NCBI GenBank assembly: GCA_964247055.1
Contig: OZ176054.1
Location: 9,424,001-9,488,000 of the forward strand
Origin: Paragordius varius
Taxonomy: Eukaryota; Animalia; Nematomorpha
Direction: 5' to 3'
DNA: 64,000 nucleotides
Of this stretch, positions 15,263 to 39,006 are shown one piece after another (the first letter of the stretch is position 1; each line of letters begins with the position of its first letter). Under the pieces are notes generated by a model that had not been told where the DNA came from, ran no database searches, and saw only the letters and a program-made list of their open reading frames with translations. A program made the position numbers and the translations under genes.

Positions 15263-15700
15263 TATATATTAATTTAAATTTAGTCTGGGGTATTTAGAAA
15301 CTCCAATTTGAATCGAAGTAATCGAAGAACTGAAATGTTTAAGTGTTAACCAAAGATGTGCAAATTTTGCCATTTTTTGATGTGGAGCATTGCCCCAAAA
15401 ATGTAAGAAACTTTTTTAAACAACTCTTAAGCCATAAAAAAAGCATCATTACTATTGATGCATTCTTTCTATTTGAATATATTCCCATACATATAATGTG
15501 AAGAAGTTGTCACAAAAGTGTAAATAACTTTCTTACTCACAAGTGCCAAAACCTAAGGCACAATATTAATTCTGATACATTTTACTATCAAGATAAATAT
15601 ATTTCACGATTATTTTGTCGAGACTGTAATGCGTAAATGAGCTTTAAAAAATTATATTTTGATATCACAATATTAAATAATGAATGAATAAATTTTTAGC

Positions 15701-18700
15701 ATGGAAAGCGAAGCACAAAATTTGCTTCAAAGCATTATTGAAGGAGATTCTTTTAATCAGAACTTGCGTAAATTTTTAAATTAATCTTGATAAGCTGATG
15801 AAATAAATGAGGTATCTGTTGATTATCCCAGTCAATTCTTAAATGGAACTTTAACCTTTGAGGAGTATCAACATCTGCTTGAATATGGATCCAATGACGA
15901 AGAGGATGGTATTATTTTTATTTATTATTAGATAGGTTTTCTTTAAGCGATGAAGATTGGCTTCCGTCAGACAAGAAAAATGTCCAAGAAACAGAGAAAA
16001 GGGAACGCTCACGCATAAAAAGAAGTAATCTTCCCAAACATCTTCAAGGATTAATGGGGACTGCAAATTTACAATGGGCTAATGGCCACATTTCTGAGGC
16101 TTTTAAAATATGTATGGAGATTATCAGGTTCTTAATAATTTAATATGTTTCTTTGCTTAACTACAATACTACAACGAAATTAGTTTAAAGTCCAATGTTA
16201 TTATTTGCTATATGATCGATTAATGAATTTATTGTTTTTTGGCATTTCAATTAAAATATAAAATGACACTATAGTTATCTCGCAAATCCATTTTTCAGCG
16301 AAAAATATTTTCGTTTGGTATTTAGGGTGGCCACATTTGATATCTAGGGTTGTTGGCGATTAAAGTGGATATTGGTTGTTTAATGCCGGCTTTTTTTTCT
16401 CCTTTTAGGATATTTTCCTCATAACTGCAATTTAGGGGCGGGGGGTGAGGTTTCATTTAGTAAATAATTTTAACTCTTTATTAATTTTAATAAATCATCC
16501 GGCTTATGAAAAAGTGGGCCCAATTTGTGGGATATGTGGCCTAATTCTTATATATTGTTTACCTTATGTACTAGATGTCTTTTATTGTTAATAATAATTT
16601 TATTAAGGATTAATTGTGGTCGCTTAAAATATTCATCAAAATGTGGTATAAATTATTTAACTCTTTTATTTTCATTTAATTTTGAGATATTTTGATTATT
16701 TATTTTCACAACTTATAATATCCGCAAACATTGGTATAACACTGGACACTCTGCATTTTTAACCTTATATTTTATTGTATCCTCGAAAAGTTTTTGATTA
16801 CCTTTGCCTCTTATGATAGTTTTATACCCTTGAGCCAATTAAAATTTAAATGTCTAATAAGTATTTAAAGTGTTGAGCTAAATTTAAAAATCTTCCTTGA
16901 AAAATTTTAAAAATTAAAAAATCCTCATCTCTAACTTTTTTTAAAAATTTTTAATCAATACAACCGGCAAATAAATGCATATTATGGTTTAAAAAAGGAA
17001 ATTAACTAACTTCAGAAAACTTTCAGATTTTTATAGTAAATTGATACTCATAGATTTTAATATCAGTTGTTTGTTTCAATCGTGTTTCGGAGCTATCACC
17101 TGAGATTTAAGAAAATTCTTAAAATAATAGCTTTCTTATACAGGTATACAGACTTTAATATTAAATCTTAACCAAAACGTTTTTCATAGTAGTTTTTGTG
17201 TATAATATAACTTAAAAATGTTATCTGCAAAAAAATATAAAATAAAAAAGTATTAAACTGTTAAAAAGAATTCTAGCAAATTATTGTAAAAAAGTTGTTA
17301 TTAATATATTACATTTTATGGGTTTTAGTTCGTGTCCTTCGGCACATGAACCGTATAGCCTTTTAAGCGTTTTATACAAAGAAACGGGTGAACCCCAAAA
17401 AGCTTTACAAAATGCCATTATAGCAGCTAATCTTGATACAAGCCTCGATCCCAATCGATGGATAAAACTGGCCGAACATTATATGGATGATGGTCAAACT
17501 GTTGAGGCTCTAAAATATACTCGAAAGGTTTACATTTTTTTTATAAAAATATATTTTTATTATATTTTTATATATAATTTTATTAAATATATTTACAATA
17601 TTGTTTGAAACATTTTAATTGTATGCCTTTTTAGGGTGTCTTGCGAATTTTCACAATTTTTTTATAACACTCTACTTTAAATCTAATCATAATTCCACAA
17701 AATATTCCTTCACTCTAATTTGTATTTTAATAATATTATTTTCAATATACAAGGGACTGTAGTATAAAAAGTGCTATGTTTTTACATTATCTCCTATATT
17801 ATTTATATCAAACAAGTGTAGACAAACGTAAAAAACCATTGAAAATCGAAATGAATAAATTCTTATATTGATCGATCCCTTATAATAATAATATCACTAA
17901 TAATATGTGTTTTAGGTACTGTGTCTTTTGTATTCAAACGATTTTCGAATCGTCTAATATAACCGGAAGTACTTTTTTTGTTAGATTTTACTTTTAGAAC
18001 CGGTGCAGAAATTGTTTTAAAAGGAGGATAAAACCAATATTATTTTGAAATTTGACTGTAGCGGCTTACGAAATAATTGGAAACTTAACATGCAATTATG
18101 CGCACAACATCTTGGTAAAATTGATTTTTCGCAAATAATTTTTTGGAGAATAGTCTATTCAATTTAAAACGAACAAGAATACATTGTTTTACGGTCTTAT
18201 GTTGAAATCTATTAAATGGTTATAAATGCTCGCATATATTCTTTAAATGCGACCCGCCATTATATTTTGAGTTCAAAATGCGGCCCACGAAGCCATTTGT
18301 GTTTGACACCCCTGAACTTTAAAGATATGTTTTTCAAATTTTTTATGTCTTTCTGTTTATTGCCAATAATATTGATTAATTACAATTTACAAATGTTTCA
18401 TATTATATTTGATATTATTTATTTTTTAGGCAATCACTTCCCTTCGTTATAAGATTAAACGCGATAACAATGAACAAGATATTTTTCTACTTATCAGTTT
18501 GTGTTTTAATTGCGCTTTAGAGGAAGAAAAATTGAGTTTTCGAAAAGCTCTACAAGGTTTCATTTATTATATTTTTAAATGAGTAATTGTGCATAAATTT
18601 GTGTGAATTCAGTTAAAAATTAGTAAAAAGGTTATTTATTATTAAAACATTTATTGCTTCCCTTAATTGTTTTAACATAAATTTAACTTTAATAATTTTT

Positions 18701-21700
18701 TAGCTTATGAACAACTGTATCAGTACATGCTTAAATTCCGTGTATTCAATCATCCCGAAATCAAAGAACAAAACGTTATCGTTAAAATTGCTCAATTACT
18801 GCAATCACAGAAGAATGATGCACAAGCCTACAAAAGCTTACAAGCTATTTTTGTCAAATATCCCGTCGGGGATATAGATCATACAATCATTAATCTTTAT
18901 CTTGATGTTGCGGTAAATATATTAACTAACTAACTAACATGATTTAATTGTCAATAATCTATCTGACCTATGATTTTAATTTGATTAACGATTGTTTAAT
19001 TAAACTATTCACAAAAATGACTACAAATGTACTCTGAAATCAAACTGCTTAGTTCCAATTATATTTTTTTCTATTACGTAATCGGGTTGTTTTAGGGGTT
19101 AAGTTAAACCCTTGCACTTTAATTTAAACCAAACTATATTTTCAATAATTTTAGATAAAAACCGGAAATTATTTTGAAGTTCTTATCATACTTGGTAAAG
19201 TTTGTGCAATAGATTTTCTCTCACCTGCTCTCGTAAAATCGAATGTCGATTTCATCGATAGTTTTGCCAATAGACATATCAACCTACCTAGTAATTTACC
19301 GATCGATCTGCAATGTAAATTAGGCATTGCTCTTATTTTGTTGCAAAAGAAACCGCAATATAACTTTTTCGATGAACTATATTCTTTTCATGAAAATGAG
19401 GGTTTATACACCAAACTCCTGAACGAAATTGAACAAACGTTATTGAGTCTTGAACCAAATATGTTTGGTGATTTATACATAGATCTTATAGAGGCTTATA
19501 AAATAAAACCTGATATTGATATAGCCAATAATGCCACCTTACACCCAACAAAATTGGATTCATCAACATTCGCATATCGAATTCGTGATCTACATTTAAA
19601 AAAATCTTTGACTTTATTTTATAAACTACTAGGCATAACAACGCCCAATTTATCGGAATTGATTCAATCACGAAAAAAAAATAACTGGTCCCATTTCGAA
19701 ACCCAACTTAACGCTACTAATTATGTCGATATCCCAGGTATATGGCTTTCATTTTCCGAAGTTTTGGAGTATTTGAATTATCTTTCTCTGGCTCTTGAGG
19801 CGATTGAAAAAGTGCTAGCCATAATTCCTAATCATTTTATTGCAAAATTTAAGTACCGCACACTTAACAAAAAATTGGGGATTGAATTACCCATTAACAC
19901 GGTGGAAAAAACTTCTTTTGATGCCGTAAATCAAACATCAAACCTAAATGAGATTAAGGATTTAGGGAATGAACTAAACATGTTCCCATACCCCGCTCCC
20001 TATTATACCTTGCAATATTTTTCGAATCTCAATGATCTCGACCTACTTGAAGAATGTTTGAAAGAATGTCAAAATCTCGAATTACAAATGCATATTCATC
20101 AACATAATAACACCAGTGCACTCATGTTACCTGCTAATCGTACAACTGAAAATATATATCTTGAACGTTTTATAAATTATTCCATAATTTCATACGTAGG
20201 TATGGGCCTTTCCATTATCTATTCACTGGCGCTCGATAATACGGATGAGAGGTGCCTAATACCCAAATCATTTATTCAAAGGCATTTACATGCAACGAAA
20301 ATGAGATTACAGCATGATACTCATCATGGTGATATGTCGTCCGGTTTAAATCATACGCCCTTAACAAATGAAAAATATAGTATGGGATCAAAACGTGGTT
20401 ATTATATCATGAATTTGGCTAAAAAATTGTTTGAACGAATGATTGATACGTTAACTAAGCTTGTATTACAGCAAGAAAGCTATATGCGTGATAATGAAAA
20501 CTTTGAAAATCAAGAGGGGGCTAAATTTATACATGATACCCTAAATACTCTCTTATTTTTGTTATTGTGTGGCGCGGGATATCGAAATTTATTTTGCAAC
20601 AAAGATATAAGAAAACAATTAAAGTACAATGTAACATTCCTAGCCATTAAGCTTAACAATTGGCCGCTGACCATGGAATTTTTAAGAATGTTTATACGGG
20701 AAACTGATACAGGCATAAATAATGTCCAAATTAGTGACAGTACTTTATCAACAGATCAAATGATTTCGTTAACCGAATCGACTCATAAATATCGAGCCGT
20801 ATATGTGTTAAATACTAGCTTACTCAATACCTTAATTTACGTTTTTAATAAGACCCTATACCCAAGTGGAGATATGGAGGATGCATGCTTTAAAACTCCA
20901 TTCGCCGAAATGAATCTCACTGAGTCTCGGTCCTCACATGAACCCATAAATCCATCGGTAGTTAAGTTAAAGACAAACCTATATAATTTTAATGGCATAT
21001 ACAGGCTAATACGTTCCCGTTTAAACCAATGTGTCAATAGCTCTCGAGTTGTCGGACCAACTTACGAACCGTTGAATCAATTGATGGTGCTGACACACGA
21101 ACTTTTACATTCTTTTGCACTTGCTTCTATAAACATGAGCATTGGATATCATGGATCTGCCCTCTCTGAGTGCCGTAATTTACTTGTTTTGGCCCATAAA
21201 ATTCGATCCTTTCTGACACTTAACCCGGAATGTTTAAACATTTATTTTGGCCCGGATGAAATGGATCACATAGAGGCTCAAACATATTTCATGTTAGGGG
21301 TCTGTTTACTTAATCATTCCTGTAAACCGTATACCCTACATCGCCAAGCTCCTATATTTTTAGGGTTTCCCTCGCTCGACGCCCAAAAAGCATACGAGGA
21401 TTGTGCCAAAATTTTGGCTCCGTACATACCTATAACATATGCTTTTATCTGTTTTTCAATGTATCGATCCTTGAGAGTCGGTGAATATATTCGGGAAAAT
21501 GTTGAAAAAGATCAAACTTCAAGCATTGATGAAAAAAATAACCTATGTTTACAGCAAGAAGTGTTATATAATATTGGACGCGCATTTCATCAAGTTAATA
21601 TGATACCCCAAGCCTTGCATTATTATGAAGAGGCTTTATCCGTACCGCCAGCGCGTTTACAATCCCCTTCAACAGACGCCAACATTAAAAAAAAAATTAG

Positions 21701-21818
21701 TAAGGTTTTTACCTATGATCTCACAAAACACATAGCTTTCAATTTGCGAGCCATATATATGAACTCTGAATCCTATGATATGGCTTCCTATATAACACAG
21801 AAATATTTGCAAGAATGA
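15701..21818 (+). CDS. GTF3C3: General transcription factor IIIC subunit 3 (TFIIIC102/Tfc4), TPR protein, predicted 7 exons, ~1191 aa
   Basis: Exons 15701-15767, 15795-15908, 15932-16127, 17329-17527, 18430-18556, 18704-18912, 19155-21818 join in frame with GT-AG introns (3576 nt). Motifs FLNGTLTFEEY, SNLPKHLQGLMGTAN...ICMEII, EPYSLLSVLY...AIIAANL, LPIDLQCKL and C-terminal QEVLYNIGRAFHQ...ALHYYEEAL...AFNL match GTF3C3. The first exon is the least certain. Confidence 0.88.
18240..18314. mobile_element. One end of a Charlie/Buster-type hAT MITE in a GTF3C3 intron
   Basis: atgcggcccacgaagccatttgtgtttgacacccctg ends in the reverse complement of a CAGGGGTGTCAAAC-type TIR; the matching end and TSD are not clearly found. 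Confidence 0.45.
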
Positions 21819-24465: not shown

Positions 24466-25803
24466 ATGTCATATAATACCACCAAAATTTTAATAATTGA
24501 TAAAAAGTTAGTTTCACGGTGTGTAAACTACAGTTCAATAGATTTATTTCCACGAATATTTCCAAACGAATTCACTAAATACGTGTCTATCATCTTATTT
24601 TTTATGGGTATATTTGGGAATGCGTATGGTTATCGATTGGCCAAATATCGTCTTTTCCCTGCTTCTAAACAAGTCCAAGGGAGACGCTCAACCTCTTTGA
24701 ATACATCCAAGTTATCAATAAATCAATATCTGTTGAAATGGTTTTACCAAATTAATTTTATCAACACGTTTCTAATGATCCTATCACCCATTCTACAGAT
24801 CTGGGGTAATGCTGACAAAAATTTGATTTGGGCCCGAAGGGATTGGAATTTTTATCTTGCCCATATCCATTATTTTTTGTGCAAGAGTTTGATAAGTTTT
24901 GGTTTTCTTATCTACATTTTATTTTTTGCTAATGAGCTGGTAGCTGTGTTTAAACCGTTCCAATATCGTACGATGGTAACATACAAACGCATTAATTACC
25001 TATTACTCATATGTTTTATTGCTTGTTATGTTTGGCACATTCCCACAATCTTTTGGTTAAAATCTTACCGTGTCTATATCTGTGTCAATGATACCAAAAG
25101 AATCCCTTTAATGCGGGGATTCCGTTTTTTTCCTGCTCAGTATGACAATTACGGTATGTTCATCTGGTACCATAAGGCTAACCCCATAAGCGCCCGGTCC
25201 TCGACTTGGGATAAGCTTTCCAAAGCTTATGAAATATCACGGGATTTATGTCTACGGATTTTACCCTTCCTAACAGTATTTGCTGCTAAAATTTTTCTGA
25301 TTAAGCGTGAAAACAAAGTTGCTCAAACAATACGTAATTATAGTTCGGTTGCTGCTGAATCTCCAAGCGATTTTAAATCGAGTTTTGTTGCGGTGGATAC
25401 CGTTCGTAGCCGTAGTGAAAGTAGAATGAGTTACATATTTACTGCACCACGTAAATCATCTCGCATAGCTGATGAAGAGAATAAAAGTAAGTCCTCAATA
25501 ACAGGACCATCAACTTCCACATGGTACACGAGGAAGATGGAAAAGAATGCCGAAAACTTGAAGACACTTTTCGTGCTAACGGCAGAATTTATATTTTTTC
25601 TTTTACCAATCTCTTTGATACAAATGTTTTGGGATTTTATAGCACCTCGCTTATCGCCACACCTTATATCAACGTGGTTTGAGTTTTTTTGTTTGTTGGA
25701 ATATGTTTATGTAACTTGTACATTTTACTTTAATTTTGCTTTTAACAAATATTACCGTAAATCTGCGATACTTTCATGGAAACATGACGTTAATAAAGGG
25801 TAA
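24466..25803 (+). CDS. Divergent single-exon rhodopsin-like (class A) GPCR, 445 aa
   Basis: About seven hydrophobic segments, TM1 GIFGN, TM3 end LVAVFKPFQYR (equivalent to xIAVCxP..Y), TM6 EFIFFLLP, TM7 FYFNFAFNKYYR. Loosely peptide-receptor-like; ligand unknown. Confidence 0.8.
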   Translation: MSYNTTKILIIDKKLVSRCVNYSSIDLFPRIFPNEFTKYVSIILFFMGIFGNAYGYRLAKYRLFPASKQVQGRRSTSLNTSKLSINQYLLKWFYQINFINTFLMILSPILQIWGNADKNLIWARRDWNFYLAHIHYFLCKSLISFGFLIYILFFANELVAVFKPFQYRTMVTYKRINYLLLICFIACYVWHIPTIFWLKSYRVYICVNDTKRIPLMRGFRFFPAQYDNYGMFIWYHKANPISARSSTWDKLSKAYEISRDLCLRILPFLTVFAAKIFLIKRENKVAQTIRNYSSVAAESPSDFKSSFVAVDTVRSRSESRMSYIFTAPRKSSRIADEENKSKSSITGPSTSTWYTRKMEKNAENLKTLFVLTAEFIFFLLPISLIQMFWDFIAPRLSPHLISTWFEFFCLLEYVYVTCTFYFNFAFNKYYRKSAILSWKHDVNKG

Positions 25804-31117: not shown

Positions 31118-33242
31118 ATGCTTTTTTGGTTGTTGTGCAAAAATCCCATAAATTTTATCCTAATTATCCTCTCTAGTATGACAGTCTTGCACAAAAAATG
31201 TGAAAGTAAAACCACCACAATGTCGATTCCTACCTTAGTAAAGATGAAATATATTGCAAACTTAATGGGCTTAAATCCAGCAATCATATTTTTTTATAAT
31301 ATTCCAGAATCTATATCACATTTTACGAACGATCCCGGGAAGTATTTTAATAACCATGGTTTTAAGAAATTCAATAATATTTCACCCACAAATATGCATT
31401 TAAACAACGAAAAGCTTAATATCCATCGAATATTTAGAGATATTAAAAAGTTTAACCCAAACTTGTTACAAAAAAATCAGGTATTAAAATTGAATAATGT
31501 CGTAAATATTACCGAAACTACTATACTTCTACCTAACGGAGAAAACGCAGATAATAATAAGAATAAGAATAAAAACAATAATAAAGGGCTTGTTTTACAA
31601 GGTATAGATCCATTCCAAAATTTGAATGAGAATGGGAGTGATCCCTTTATAACAAACATATTACCCCAAGAGCCCCTATTCCATATAAATTTAACTAACA
31701 TTTCAGATATAACAATTTCAACTCCCACCACGACTAACATACCGAATATTACTACTGCGATATTTTTATCTTCCATTGCTGATTTTCATCCCAAAAATTT
31801 GTCTAACATCAATCGAGCGGCATTTGTAAACAAAACCCAAAAGAGTAGAGTTTATCCATCCACGAGCATATTAAGTACTCCACCATATCAGACAACTCCC
31901 GCTATCGATCTACCAACAACATTATCCACAAACGATCTCAAACCCGAAGAACAAGAAAGCGAACAACGGCAACGGAGTATCGTACTGTTGAAAAGTCAAA
32001 TAACTTTTACACCCATATATCTCATTCTCCTGATCCTGGGTATTTTTGGCAATGCCCTTGTGATATATGTTGTGTGTTTTGATCGAAGTATGCGAAGTTT
32101 TACCAACATTTATTTGGTTAACTTAAGTTTGGCAGACTTGCTCATTATGCTAACATGTATGCCGACAGCTTTAGCTGATCTCTACTCTCAGGAGATTTGG
32201 CTATTTGGCAAAAATATGTGTAAGTTCATTCTATATTCCTTTTTCTATCTTTTTGATTACTAAGTGGCGTGGCAAACATATGGATAATAATAGATGATGC
32301 TGAACTATTTAGCATCAAAAAACTAATTAACTGTTTTCTGTGTTTGCGTATATGTGCTAGGGTTTTTCAAAAGACTTTTTATAATTTTATTGTTGTGTTT
32401 CTTTTGTAATTTAAATATTTTAGGAAGCAAAATTGTAATAGCTAGAGTCAAGTTGACTAAACCCATGATGATAATTAATATATGTGCAAAAAAAGTTTTG
32501 CTTGGCAAAAGTCAGAAAAATTTGTATGCTAAAGACAAACCCCGCATTTTTTATTCAAAAGAAAAATTTCATTGATGTCATTTTATGAATAAATTAATGG
32601 GATATTTTTGCAACACAACTACAAGTTTTTCGATTAAATTTTTGTAAGTAAAGGAACCTGGTTAACATAAAAAGGTAACAATTAAGTTAATTTTTTTATA
32701 ACATTATATAACTTAACGATATGAATAAATTTACTAAATGTTAAACTTAAATTCCAATTTTGTTAAAAACATGTTTGCACATACTTATTACAGTGATCAA
32801 GATCCTAATTATCGGGCTACTTTATTTGGGGAACACAGATAAAATATATTATATTTAAGCAATATAACTTGTAATATTTTTCTTCTCGCAGTGGGATTCT
32901 TATGTCTTAAAAATATATTTGGGATAATATGAGTATATACTTCATAACCGTTTTCAATTCATTTGCAAAATTATTTTGAAAAATGTGATGTATATTTTCT
33001 CTTCTCAAACTTTTGTCTCCATGTATTTTTTTGGATTCTTTGCAATAAAAGATAAAAACCCAAAATTAACGAGCGATTTTTATATGCATGGGAGCATAAT
33101 AATTTTGGACCACAAAAGTTGGAAAATTATTAGAAAAAGCTTTTTGATAACAGTTAGTATAACGTTTTGCAATTTATTTTAAGTAAAGTTTTTATTATAT
33201 TTTTATTACGATATTAAGACTGTATTAGATATAGATTCATAT

Positions 33243-36200: not shown

Positions 36201-39006
36201 ACAATTTATAATTTCCATATAAAATTCATAACACGATCTCCCTATCTCTCTAAAATATATTAAACCATCTTTTACACTGAAAAATTAGTAATAGGATAAT
36301 GTGATGTTGACTAACTGTTTGATTTATGGTATCATTTATATTATCGTCGCACATATACAGGATTCAAACGAACTAATTATTATTATTACAGAATTAATTA
36401 AAATATAATTTTTCATGGTTGTTTTAGATTAAAATATACAAATTTACAGTAAAAATTGATACGGACAAAACGCGTAAAAATGTAGAGGCAAATATTTTTT
36501 TTCTAAAATACATCCATACTTTTTAAAACCTATTTAATATAACTTATTGGTTTAAACTCCAAAGTTCAGAATAGAGATGTATATTGGTAACACAATCAAT
36601 TACATATTTCACGATTGTTAATAAATGATTTTAATAGGAAAGATTAAGGTTTGAAAAAGTATGATTGTCTTTTGAAAAAAAAAATGTCTTTATATTTTTA
36701 CTGTAAATAACAATTCATTTTTAGGTAAAGCTGTTCCATTTCTCCAATCGACTGTAACTCGAACATCAGTGTTAACTATATTAGCCATAAGTTTTGAACG
36801 CTTCCTAGCCATATGTTATCCACTCAAAATGCAAGGCTACATATCAGGGGCAAGCCTTGGGCGTTCAACGCGAAACATTCTAATTATATGGAGTGTTTCC
36901 TTACTCACTAATACCCCTTACATAAATATAACGAAATTTGTTTTAGCGCCCCATCAAAATGGTCAAATGGTACCAGTGTGCGTTACTTCCATCCACAAAC
37001 AATGGGAACAAATATTTTTCTTAGTATCTGTAACTATTTTTTACCTTATACCCCTAATTATATTGCTCTGTCTCTACTATAAGATTGTAAAGGTACTGGC
37101 CAAGAGTCAGGACATTGATTCTACAGTTGAACGTATGAAACGAAAGGACACCAAGCGCTTACTAGCCAGGCAAAAAAGATTTGAGGCACAAAATTTACAA
37201 GTGTGCCACACGGGAAAAAGTAGGGATCAGGATGAAAAAAATGTGTATCATAAATTACAATTAATGTGTAAAAACAGGAAATCTGCCAACACAAACTTAT
37301 CTAAAGTCCAAAAAAGTTTTACAATAAATAATAAGAACAATGACAAAAACGTTAATGTAATAAATTACGACACAACAAAGGCTTTAAAAAGCACAAACTT
37401 ATGTTATAAAAAACCGCCAATTACTTCGTTAGTTAATAGTGATATGTTAAAGGCTTGTATGACCACCACAAACCACAATCAATCTATTAATGTGAATGAG
37501 AGAAAAAAGAAATTAAAAAAATGCAATTTCACAAATTCCATTGTAAATGTCAACAGTGGAAGCACTGATAAAGATGATGTTCAAGACCTTGATTTTTCCC
37601 ATGATGGTAATGGTATTGATAATTATTTAAACAAGCCTACAAACCACCATACAGTTAGCACACATATTAACGCAAAAAACAATACAATAATAAATTCCAT
37701 TATTGATAATGGCCAACAACACTATCAGCCAAATGACAAATTTTATTCTTGTCCTTCTTCTCATTCTTCAACTCAAAGGCCAAAAAATCAAGATAATAAA
37801 TTATTATCAAATTGTGATTCCAAGAAAGACACAACTAAAACAAATAAATTTTATCAAAATATTACAATGATGATGGTTCCCATTACATCTTCTCCCATGT
37901 CAAAAATGTCATCACAAGAAAAGACTGTTTATCAAGCGTCCTCCCTCTATAAATCAATAATGAAAAATGGTAATAAAAATTCAACTATTGCCAATATGTC
38001 AACAGAGTGTCAGCATCAAAATCCTATCGAAAACAATAGCAATGAAGAAGATCATTTTAACACAAATAATCATACGAATGATGAAATTGAATTTAGAAAA
38101 AACGATTTAGATAAAGAAAATAGCCAGCAAGTTGATAATACAATAGTAATAAATTCCCTTTTAGATAAATCGTCAGTTGCACAATCCAATTTTATCAATG
38201 TGACACGCGATCGTGATGCCGAAAAATGCCATAAAGACAAATGTCAATCCAAAGTTATACTTCAATTTAATGATAATAGTAATTCTAATAAAAAGTCATC
38301 AAAATTAAAAAACAAGTCTCAAACATTAAACGGTAACCACAACAATACTGACGATGATTTTAATAAAACAATTATAATTTCCAACAAGGACACAAAAAGA
38401 AATTTCACATTATCCAAAATTGATGGAACCGATAAAGTAATTCTCCCAGCCCACGAGAGTAACAAAATTAAACGATCCAAATATATTAAACATTCATTAA
38501 CACAACCAATCCGGCCCAATAGCATACGAAATCAACAGAATCAACACATCCAGCATTATTCATGCGATACACCTTCTTTTGGGAATAAAAAAGAAATTTC
38601 ATCATCTCAAAGCAGGAGTTTTAAGCGAAAACAATTTACCCTTAATCGTTCCATTACTTTAGGACAAAGTACAAGTGTTAGTGGGTCCAAACCCAAAACA
38701 ACAATTACAGCCATTAATCAGGGCCGTAAACAATTGATTGTAATGTTAATTTCGGTGGTCGGTATGTTTTTTATTTGCCTACTTCCATTCCATTGTCTCA
38801 GTATTTGGTTAATGTTCGTCCCTCATACACGTGTGATGGCTTTGGGTGTCGAAAAATATACCGTTATTTTATGTTTTACACGAGTTATGTATTACCTAAA
38901 TTCAGCCATCAATCCAATCTTGTACAATGTTATATCAACCAAATTTCGGAAATCGTTTGCCCGCGCACTTAACACATGTTTTTGTCTTCGTTCATCTTCC
39001 CAATGA
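31118..39006 (+). CDS. Class A neuropeptide GPCR, ecdysis-triggering-hormone-receptor-like (TRH/GHS receptor-related), 2 exons, ~1127 aa
   Basis: Exons 31118-32219 and 36725-39006, phase-1 GT-AG intron splitting MC|KAVPF. Motifs GIFGNALV, NLSLADLL, CKAVPF...SVLTILAISFERFLAICYPL, RKQLIVML...FFICLLPF...LWL...LG.E.Y...F.RVMYYLNSAINPILYNVISTKFR closely resemble recalled arthropod ETHR sequences. Confidence 0.85.

What the first reader, a model, noticed from the sequence alone, without database searches (positions are those of the whole stretch)
15768..15931. Two more ultra-short introns (27 and 23 nt) at the 5' end of GTF3C3
Seen: the conserved FLNGTLTFEEY exon joins the SNLPKHLQGLMG exon by removing GTATTATTTTTATTTATTATTAG (15909-15931, 23 nt; read-through hits TAG). 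The upstream ATG exon joins by removing GTAAATTTTTAAATTAATCTTGATAAG (15768-15794, 27 nt). The 27-nt intron is a multiple of 3 but contains an in-frame TAA, while the other four tiny introns are non-3n. Established: this pattern (stopless 3n introns avoided) was described for Paramecium tiny introns. Inference: an independent second gene supports the class. Alternatives exist: a 71-nt intron (15865-15935) that discards coding-looking sequence, or a 20-nt intron after an ATG near 15807.
Basis: partly seen in the sequence, partly recalled or inferred. Interest (0 to 1): 0.75.

Follow-up and report, generated by a model that had tools for sequence, protein, structure and literature searches.

The report
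Two tiny introns in GTF3C3
The start of an ordinary housekeeping gene (GTF3C3) in this AT-rich, hairworm-like animal reads as a normal protein only if segments of 27 and 23 bases are spliced out; introns this short are published for only two other animal groups, and no RNA was available to show the cutting.

Summary
At 15768-15794 (27 nt) and 15909-15931 (23 nt) there are AT-rich GT...AG segments (15% and 9% GC) between exon-like pieces (34-38% GC).

The gene is GTF3C3/TFIIIC102. Exon 3 matches human GTF3C3 residues 130-177, and the last exon matches its C-terminus. The whole gene is colinear with the RefSeq protein of the hairworm Gordionus (LOC135922984), including the ATG exon and the FLNGTLTFEEY exon.

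Between the conserved anchors, the 27-nt segment is the only GT-AG solution. The donor at 15909 is the only GT donor for the second intron. Acceptor 15931 (23 nt) is favoured by composition, codon statistics and being the first AG.

I validated the class independently. 180 kb upstream, the RPL17 gene is split exactly between residues 27 and 28 by a 22-nt GT-AG segment.

A 27-nt intron of this composition has an in-frame stop 59-68% of the time by chance.

No RNA evidence could be obtained. Earlier agents of this scan noted the same intron class many times elsewhere in this genome.

The parts
15701..15767 (+). Exon 1 of the GTF3C3 ortholog (ATG start, 22 codons plus 1 base, phase 1)
   Evidence: First ATG after an in-frame TAA at 15689-15691. 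Residues 3-16 match residues 4-17 of Gordionus XP_065313628.1 at 71% identity, E 4e-4. Shuffle p is 2.5e-4 against the first 40 residues. Codon log-odds +7.0 bits. GC 34%.
15768..15794 (+). Intron 1, 27 nt, GT-AG, phase 1, 15% GC, with three in-frame stops if retained
   Evidence: The only GT-AG solution between the conserved anchors 15748 and 15803. No internal AG. Codon log-odds -13.2 bits if read as coding. Stops if retained are shown.
15795..15908 (+). Exon 2, carrying the conserved TFIIIC102 N-terminal motif (QFLNGTLTFEEYQHLLE)
   Evidence: The motif profile from 17 non-hairworm orthologs hits this ORF alone in the window, E 2.5e-5, and the alignment runs to 15883. BLASTP to Gordionus residues 41-65, E 4e-6. 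The tail 15866-15907 scores +5.5 bits, above the 95th percentile of non-coding sequence.
15909..15931 (+). Intron 2, 23 nt, GT-AG, phase 1, 9% GC; retention gives TAG at 15929-15931
   Evidence: 15909 is the only GT donor between anchor 15889 and the exon-2 frame stop, and 15931 is the first AG. Composition. Codon log-odds -8.1 bits. An alternative acceptor at 15955 (47 nt) also keeps frame and is not excluded.
15932..16127 (+). Exon 3: acidic-Trp-x-Pro motif, a basic stretch and the start of TPR1 (LPKHLQGLMGTANLQWA...CMEII)
   Evidence: phmmer against human GTF3C3 8clk_D residues 130-177, E 4.7e-7. BLASTP to Gordionus residues 135-170, E 1e-14. The first 8 codons score +2.2 bits.
16128..17328 (+). 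Intron 3, an ordinary long intron (1,201 nt, GT...TTTTAG, phase 2)
   Evidence: Donor read and acceptor. 25% GC. Many database fragments of GTF3C3 from other animals run into junk right after the EIIR/EIIK motif, which points to a conserved intron position.
17329..17527 (+). Exon 4 (TPR region, PSAHEPYSLLSVLY...)
   Evidence: tblastn of Gordionus P0058 residues 173-236 onto 17336-17527, E 1.6e-14. Boundaries read.
18784..18909 (+). Part of a middle exon (boundaries not determined)
   Evidence: tblastn HSP to Gordionus residues 308-349, E 0.023, colinear with the other HSPs.
19155..21818 (+). Large last exon (about 887 codons) ending at the stop codon
   Evidence: tblastn to Gordionus residues 371-1178, E 1.9e-71. 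Matches the C-terminus of human GTF3C3, residues 811-881, E 3.8e-11. Pfam TPR_1 at residues 741-768 of the ORF.

Best explanation
15701-21818 (+) is the single-copy GTF3C3 (TFIIIC102) gene of an AT-rich animal. Its closest relative in the public protein collections is the hairworm Gordionus.

The first two introns are genuine GT-AG spliceosomal introns of 27 nt (15768-15794) and 23 nt (15909-15931), both in phase 1. They are very AT-rich, start with GTA, and end at the first AG after the donor. Ordinary introns of about 0.1-1.2 kb follow.

Splicing joins the ATG exon to the exon with the conserved N-terminal motif, and that exon to the exon that begins the TPR array.

If either intron is retained, the reading frame stops at once (TAA 15782, TAG 15929). 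An unspliced message therefore cannot make a full-length or aberrantly extended protein.

Shown here: the exons, their homology and colinearity, the frames, and the existence of the class in this genome (RPL17). Inferred: that the cut happens at exactly these sites in RNA, and that the major U2-type spliceosome does it.
For: **Gene identity.** Exon 3 matches human GTF3C3 and the last exon matches its C-terminus. The gene is colinear with Gordionus LOC135922984 across five HSPs, and with named cluster members.

**Exon 1.** BLASTP E 4e-4 at the very N-terminus; shuffle p 2.5e-4.

**Exon 2.** The pan-animal motif profile hits only this ORF in the window, E 2.5e-5, with the next best hit at E 1.1.

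**Need for removal.** Read-through is closed at both places.

**Uniqueness.** There is one GT-AG solution for intron 1. There is one GT donor for intron 2, and the 23-nt version uses the first AG.

**Composition and codon statistics.** Introns are 15% and 9% GC against 34-38% in the exons. Log-odds are -13 and -8 bits for the introns. They are +5.5 bits for the stretch the 71-nt model would discard and +2.2 bits for the 8 codons the 47-nt model would discard.

**The class exists in this genome, tested by me.** In RPL17, exon 1 matches residues 1-27 and the next exon starts at residue 28. The two are separated by a 22-nt GT-AG segment. The heme-lyase gene has a similar 22-nt candidate. Adjacent Ras-family exon hits across the genome imply gaps of about 19-26 nt.

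**Copy number.** The gene is single-copy in the 110.6-Mb assembly.
Against: - No RNA evidence was found.
- The linker regions around both junctions are poorly conserved, so homology cannot fix the junctions to the residue, unlike in RPL17.
- Acceptor 15955 (47 nt) is also in frame and keeps the [DE][DE]DW.P motif.
- Rough estimates from the Ras table suggest that introns of about 46-58 nt may also exist in this genome. Length class alone therefore does not exclude the 47-nt version.
- The tail of exon 2 and the head of exon 3 are not individually significant against Gordionus (p 0.15 and 0.09).
- ORF-bridging and composition scans of 264 kb gave no clear excess of GT-AG over control dinucleotide pairs.
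Confidence: 0.74

Rival explanations
1. Intron 2 uses the same donor (15909) but a downstream acceptor. The most plausible is 15955 (47 nt). Acceptors 15970, 15988 and 15994 are also in frame. These could be the sole form or an alternative 3' splice site.
For: All are GT-AG and in frame. The 47-nt version still yields an acidic-Trp-x-Pro motif at the junction. Rough gap estimates suggest some 46-58-nt introns elsewhere in the genome. In canonical spliceosomes, an AG very close to the branch point can be skipped (general knowledge).
Against: 15931 is the first AG and follows a T-rich run, whereas 15955 follows a purine-rich GATGAAG. The 24 nt that would be discarded are 33% GC and score +2.2 bits as codons, just above the non-coding 95th percentile. 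The validated RPL17 intron uses the first AG, at 22 nt.
Confidence: 0.12
2. Exon 1 is not part of the coding sequence. Translation would start at ATG 15808 followed by a 20-nt intron (15813-15832), or a distant upstream exon would splice into exon 2.
For: The ATG and a frame-keeping GT..AG exist. Human GTF3C3 starts close to the motif (P0045). Gordionus isoform X3 lacks the first 27 residues.
Against: Exon 1 is homologous to the Gordionus N-terminus, start to start, and looks coding at +7.0 bits. The 20-nt candidate is 35% GC, unlike the validated tiny introns. That model would also discard the INEVS stretch that aligns with LNEIS in Gordionus.
Confidence: 0.08
3. A single 71-nt intron (15865-15935) joins the motif exon to exon 3.
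For: It is GT-AG and keeps frame.
Against: It would delete YQHLLE, which both the pan-animal motif profile and the Gordionus alignment cover. The discarded 44 nt are 41% GC and score +5.5 bits as codons. It would also skip the AG at 15902 and the strong first AG at 15931.
Confidence: 0.03
4. No splicing occurs here. Either the gene is a decaying pseudogene, or the segments are assembly errors or insertions.
For: There is no RNA evidence. Frame 1 stays open across 15898-16140, so a single indel could link exons 2 and 3.
Against: The gene keeps an 887-codon open exon and full colinearity with its ortholog, and it is single-copy. Three in-frame stops in intron 1 cannot be explained by one indel. 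The same kind of segment splits RPL17 exactly between residues 27 and 28.
Confidence: 0.03

Closest known systems
Ultra-short (<30 bp) introns of myxobolid myxozoans and the dicyemid Dicyema japonicum (Hadjez et al. 2026, PMC13644364)
   Same: These are animal GT-AG introns of about 22-27 nt. The 5' signal is reduced to GTA, there is no real polypyrimidine tract, and the introns sit between conserved exons. The authors describe the spliceosome as conventional U2-type.
   Different: Those are the only two animal groups reported among 51 genomes, and the main text does not mention Nematomorpha. Here the nearest relative is a hairworm. The tiny introns are the first two of the gene and are followed by a 1.2-kb intron in a repeat-rich 110-Mb genome. 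In that paper RNA (Iso-Seq) supported the junctions; here none is available.
Paramecium and other ciliate tiny introns with a 3n deficit and in-frame stop enrichment (PMC5014332, citing Jaillon et al. 2008)
   Same: Length is about 25 nt, and intron retention gives premature stops.
   Different: The 3n deficit and stop enrichment were shown on tens of thousands of introns. Here there are five introns and a chance expectation of 59-68% for the one 3n case. The rule is untested in this genome.
GTF3C3 / TFIIIC102 (human 8clk_D; Gordionus LOC135922984)
   Same: It has the N-terminal [YF]L.G..[ST]F.E[FY] motif, an acidic-Trp/Tyr-x-Pro plus basic linker, the LQGLMG start of the TPR array, and a C-terminal TPR.
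   Different: The sequence is very divergent: about 27% identity to Gordionus over the large exon. Word-based searches found nothing.
Small 5' introns with large 3' introns in Schistosoma mansoni genes (recalled from memory of the 2009 genome paper; not verified here)
   Same: Short introns sit at the 5' end of genes and long ones further 3'.
   Different: As I recall, the schistosome small introns are above 25-30 nt with a mode in the low 30s. My one literature search did not retrieve the source.

Membership tests
GTF3C3 / TFIIIC subunit 3 (TFIIIC102) | Sequence similarity to a solved or annotated GTF3C3 at the start of the TPR array and at the C-terminus | tested here: met
   8clk_D residues 130-177, E 4.7e-7, and residues 811-881, E 3.8e-11. 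Of the 57 representative hits, the great majority are GTF3C3-like.
GTF3C3 / TFIIIC subunit 3 (TFIIIC102) | Conserved N-terminal motif upstream of the TPR array | tested here: met
   The profile of 17 orthologs hits only ORF 15794-15928 in the window, E 2.5e-5.
GTF3C3 / TFIIIC subunit 3 (TFIIIC102) | Colinearity over the full length with an ortholog; single copy | tested here: met
   Five colinear tblastn HSPs to Gordionus P0058, residues 4-1178. One locus in the genome.
GT-AG (U2-type) spliceosomal intron | GT...AG termini and restoration of an open, homologous reading frame on removal | tested here: met
GT-AG (U2-type) spliceosomal intron | Junction fixed to the residue by alignment with orthologs | tested here: inconclusive
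   Both junctions lie in poorly conserved linkers. Intron 1 is unique under GT-AG rules. Intron 2 has alternative acceptors.
GT-AG (U2-type) spliceosomal intron | Absence of the segment from mature RNA | not testable with these tools
GT-AG (U2-type) spliceosomal intron | Branch-point adenosine | tested here: inconclusive
   By eye there are A residues at positions 15-17 from the 5' end in both introns and in the RPL17 and heme-lyase introns. In sequence that is about 85-90% A+T, this is expected by chance.
Ultra-short (<30 nt) animal introns | Length under 30 nt in an animal nuclear gene, with independent examples in the same genome | tested here: met
   27 and 23 nt here. A 22-nt segment in RPL17 sits exactly between residues 27 and 28. 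A 22-nt candidate sits in the heme-lyase gene.
Ultra-short (<30 nt) animal introns | A distinct genome-wide length class | tested here: inconclusive
   Scans of 264 kb show only a small excess of GTA...AG at 22 nt (8 cases against 1-2 at neighbouring lengths). There is no overall excess over control dinucleotide pairs.
Translation-policed tiny introns (Paramecium type) | Deficit of 3n introns, and excess of in-frame stops in those that are 3n | tested here: inconclusive
   There is one 3n intron with stops. The chance expectation is 0.59-0.68. The sample is too small and ab initio detection too noisy.

The most novel reading that the evidence does not exclude
A hairworm-like ecdysozoan is a third, independent animal lineage with a discrete class of 22-27-nt spliceosomal introns. 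They are concentrated at the 5' ends of genes that also carry kilobase introns. As in Paramecium, they are kept harmless by premature stops on retention, with stopless 3n introns selected against.
Probability: 0.3. Interest if true: 0.8.

Novelty: new member of a known kind. Interest (0 to 1): 0.58.

Why it matters
Introns under 30 nt were long thought absent from animals. As of September 2026 they are published only for myxobolid myxozoans and one dicyemid (PMC13644364).

A hairworm-like genome where such introns sit next to kilobase introns in the same gene would show that extreme shortening is not just a by-product of genome compaction. It would also give a system for asking how one spliceosome handles 23-nt and 1,200-nt introns.

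There is a practical consequence too. Gene finders with a minimum intron length of 30-40 nt will truncate or mis-start genes like this one, which may depress completeness scores for such genomes.

This particular locus adds two cases and one caution: the 3n/stop pattern cannot be read from a handful of introns.

Tried and rejected
**Word-based protein searches.** Two searches with the 826-aa exon (whole, and residues 540-826) returned nothing. A search with the Gordionus N-terminus found only Gordionus itself, so there is no second hairworm ortholog to compare.

**Representative search with exon 3.** It found no protein of this species, so no RNA-derived protein spans the junctions.

**Ab initio scans of 264 kb.** I tried ORF-bridging, composition islands, donor trinucleotide and a first-AG rule. 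GT-AG counts were no higher than control dinucleotide pairs, apart from a small GTA peak at 22 nt. I did not use these as support.

**Ras-family exon-hit table.** It gives only rough intron sizes without the sequence, so I did not use it for a 3n test.

**Other blanks.** Rfam found nothing in the window. A literature search for the schistosome 5'-small-intron precedent did not retrieve the source.

All searches were exon by exon, by reference.

Nothing in the window looked human.

Full report
**What is there**

The window is 25-34% GC throughout. It is G000:C5:9424001-9488000 of a 110.6-Mb assembly in 44 contigs.

An ATG at 15701 follows an in-frame TAA and opens 22 codons. A 27-nt GT...AG segment (15768-15794) comes next, then 38 codons including QFLNGTLTFEEY. 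A 23-nt GT...AG segment (15909-15931) follows, then 65 codons including LPKHLQGLMG.

Read-through is closed at both places. There are three in-frame stops after 15782, and a TAG at 15929. Both segments are in phase 1. The junction codons would be CCT (Pro) and GAT (Asp).

**What the gene is**

- Exon 3 matches human GTF3C3 (PDB 8clk chain D) residues 130-177, E 4.7e-7.
- The large last exon matches its C-terminal TPR, residues 811-881, E 3.8e-11.
- Word-based searches with the big exon were blank, so I ran the full representative search with exon 3 alone.
- That search returned 57 hits, the great majority GTF3C3-like. One stands out: P0020 shares GTAN.QWA and an N-terminus like exon 1.
- P0020 and its cluster mates are XP_065313627-9, LOC135922984 of Gordionus sp. 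m RMFG-2023, a horsehair worm.
- tblastn of that protein on the window gives five colinear HSPs: 15707-15889, 16021-16128, 17336-17527, 18784-18909 and 19155-21809 (E 1.9e-71).
- The locus is single-copy.

This is therefore the GTF3C3 ortholog of an animal whose nearest sequenced relative is a hairworm. It is very divergent, about 27% identity over the big exon. Its genome is smaller than the 200-300 Mb quoted for published nematomorphs. I do not name the species.

**Are exons 1 and 2 real coding exons?**

All searches were exon by exon, by reference.

- *Exon 1.* Residues 3-16 align to Gordionus residues 4-17, 10 of 14 identical, E 4e-4. Shuffling exon 1 gives p 2.5e-4 against the first 40 residues.
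- *Exon 2.* Residues 3-31 align to Gordionus residues 41-65, E 4e-6.
- *Independent test without the hairworm.* I built a 28-position profile of the N-terminal motif from 17 non-hairworm orthologs. I searched it against all 3,585 stop-to-stop segments of the window in six frames. Only ORF 15794-15928 scored (E 2.5e-5; next best E 1.1). The alignment runs through YQHLLE to 15883.
- *Exon 3.* Residues 30-65 align to Gordionus residues 135-170, E 1e-14.

**Which segments must be removed?**

With the conserved residues as anchors I listed every GT-AG pair that gives an open, in-frame product.

- Between 15748 and 15803 there is exactly one: 15768-15794.
- Between 15889 and the start of the DEDW motif there is exactly one: 15909-15931.
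- With the more cautious downstream anchor (16021), the donor is still unique at 15909. However, acceptors 15955 (47 nt), 15970, 15988 and 15994 also work.
It would still produce an acidic-Trp-x-Pro motif at the junction.

Composition and codon statistics:

| Segment | GC | Codon log-odds (bits) |
|---|---|---|
| Exon 1 | 34% | +7.0 |
| Intron 1 (27 nt) | 15% | -13.2 |
| Intron 2 (23 nt) | 9% | -8.1 |
| 14 codons the 71-nt model discards | 41% | +5.5 (non-coding 95th percentile 2.3) |
| 8 codons the 47-nt model discards | 33% | +2.2 (non-coding 95th percentile 2.1) |

The exons overall are 34-38% GC and the long intron is 25% GC.

The codon log-odds model was trained on this window's long ORFs against its non-coding DNA.

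These results reject the 71-nt alternative fairly firmly and the 47-nt alternative only mildly.

**Is the class real in this genome?**

Earlier notes of this scan report 21-29-nt introns in many genes of this genome. I treated them as leads only.

In the 200 kb I could fetch upstream of the window, an ORF-bridging scan pointed to a ribosomal protein gene.

- On the minus strand of L004, residues 18-44 of ORF 1796-1927 align to residues 1-27 of RPL17/uL22 (E 3.6e-6).
- The next ORF starts precisely at residue 28 (E about 1e-16).
- The two are separated by a 22-nt GTAAC...TTTAG segment with an in-frame stop.
- This junction is fixed to the residue in an essential, highly conserved gene, so a 22-nt intron is unavoidable there.

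Two further observations fit. A heme-lyase gene has a similar 22-nt candidate between two halves of the Pfam domain. Adjacent Ras-family exon hits across the genome imply gaps of roughly 19-26 nt in six cases, and of roughly 46-86 nt in six others.

**What did not work**

- ORF-bridging and composition scans of 264 kb showed no general excess of GT-AG over control dinucleotide pairs. There was only a small GTA peak at 22 nt.
- No protein of this species covering exon 3 exists in the protein collection.
- No RNA evidence, and no Gordionus gene structure, could therefore be obtained.

**The 3n/stop inference**

The Paramecium rule is real: 3n tiny introns are under-represented and enriched in in-frame stops (PMC5014332).

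It cannot be read from these five introns. A 27-nt phase-1 intron of this composition carries an in-frame stop in 59-68% of random trials. The non-3n lengths 22-23 are simply the mode of the class. The inference is neither supported nor refuted.

**Mechanism**

Most likely (about 0.75) both segments are GT-AG introns removed by the ordinary major spliceosome. They have minimal signals: GTA at the 5' end, A/T-rich interior, and the first AG as acceptor. This is the pattern described for myxobolid and dicyemid introns.

Retention gives immediate premature stops. Candidate branch adenosines at positions 15-17 are seen by eye but mean little in such A/T-rich sequence.

**Novelty**

The current literature reports animal introns under 30 nt only in Myxobolidae and Dicyema japonicum (PMC13644364). 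The Gordionus genome paper never mentions introns.

The class in a hairworm-like animal is therefore unpublished as far as I could find. It is a new member of a known kind. This locus is one more instance of something the scan has already noted repeatedly in this genome.

Noticed in passing
L004:1774-1795 (-) = G000:C5:9245774-9245795: The RPL17/uL22 gene is split exactly between residues 27 and 28 by a 22-nt GT-AG segment (GTAAC...TTTAG). This is the cleanest calibrator of the tiny-intron class that I found.
   Followed up: yes
L014:6769-6790 (-) = G000:C5:9350769-9350790: The holocytochrome c synthase (Cyto_heme_lyase) gene has a 22-nt GT-AG candidate (GTATAT...CTTTAG). It lies between ORFs matching Pfam positions 48-175 and 236-297.
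   Followed up: partly
window 16128-17328: Intron 3 of GTF3C3 sits right after the EII(R/K) motif. Dozens of short database fragments of GTF3C3 from other animals run into junk at the same point, which suggests an ancient conserved intron position.
   Followed up: partly
window 15690-15700: A T-rich ...TTTTTAG lies immediately before the start ATG and looks like a 3' splice site. There may be a 5'-UTR intron and an untranslated first exon upstream.
   Followed up: no
Gordionus proteins P0058/P0020/P0060: RefSeq isoform X3 of the Gordionus ortholog starts at Met28 and lacks the first 27 residues. This hints at an intron or alternative first exon close to where intron 1 lies here.
   Followed up: no
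G000:C5:5361143-5361730 (+): Four consecutive Ras-domain exon hits are separated by only 1-4 bases, with overlapping model ranges. That implies three introns of roughly 19-22 nt in one small-GTPase gene. The sequence could not be fetched.
   Followed up: no
window 24466-25803, 31118-32263, 36769-39006 (+): Three long ORFs carry rhodopsin-type 7TM receptor domains (Pfam 7tm_1). The last two look like parts of one or two GPCR genes.
   Followed up: no
L017:5769-6609 (+): An MFS/SLC22-like transporter gene has candidate 25- and 27-nt GT-AG segments between long ORFs. The second junction is not clean.
   Followed up: partly
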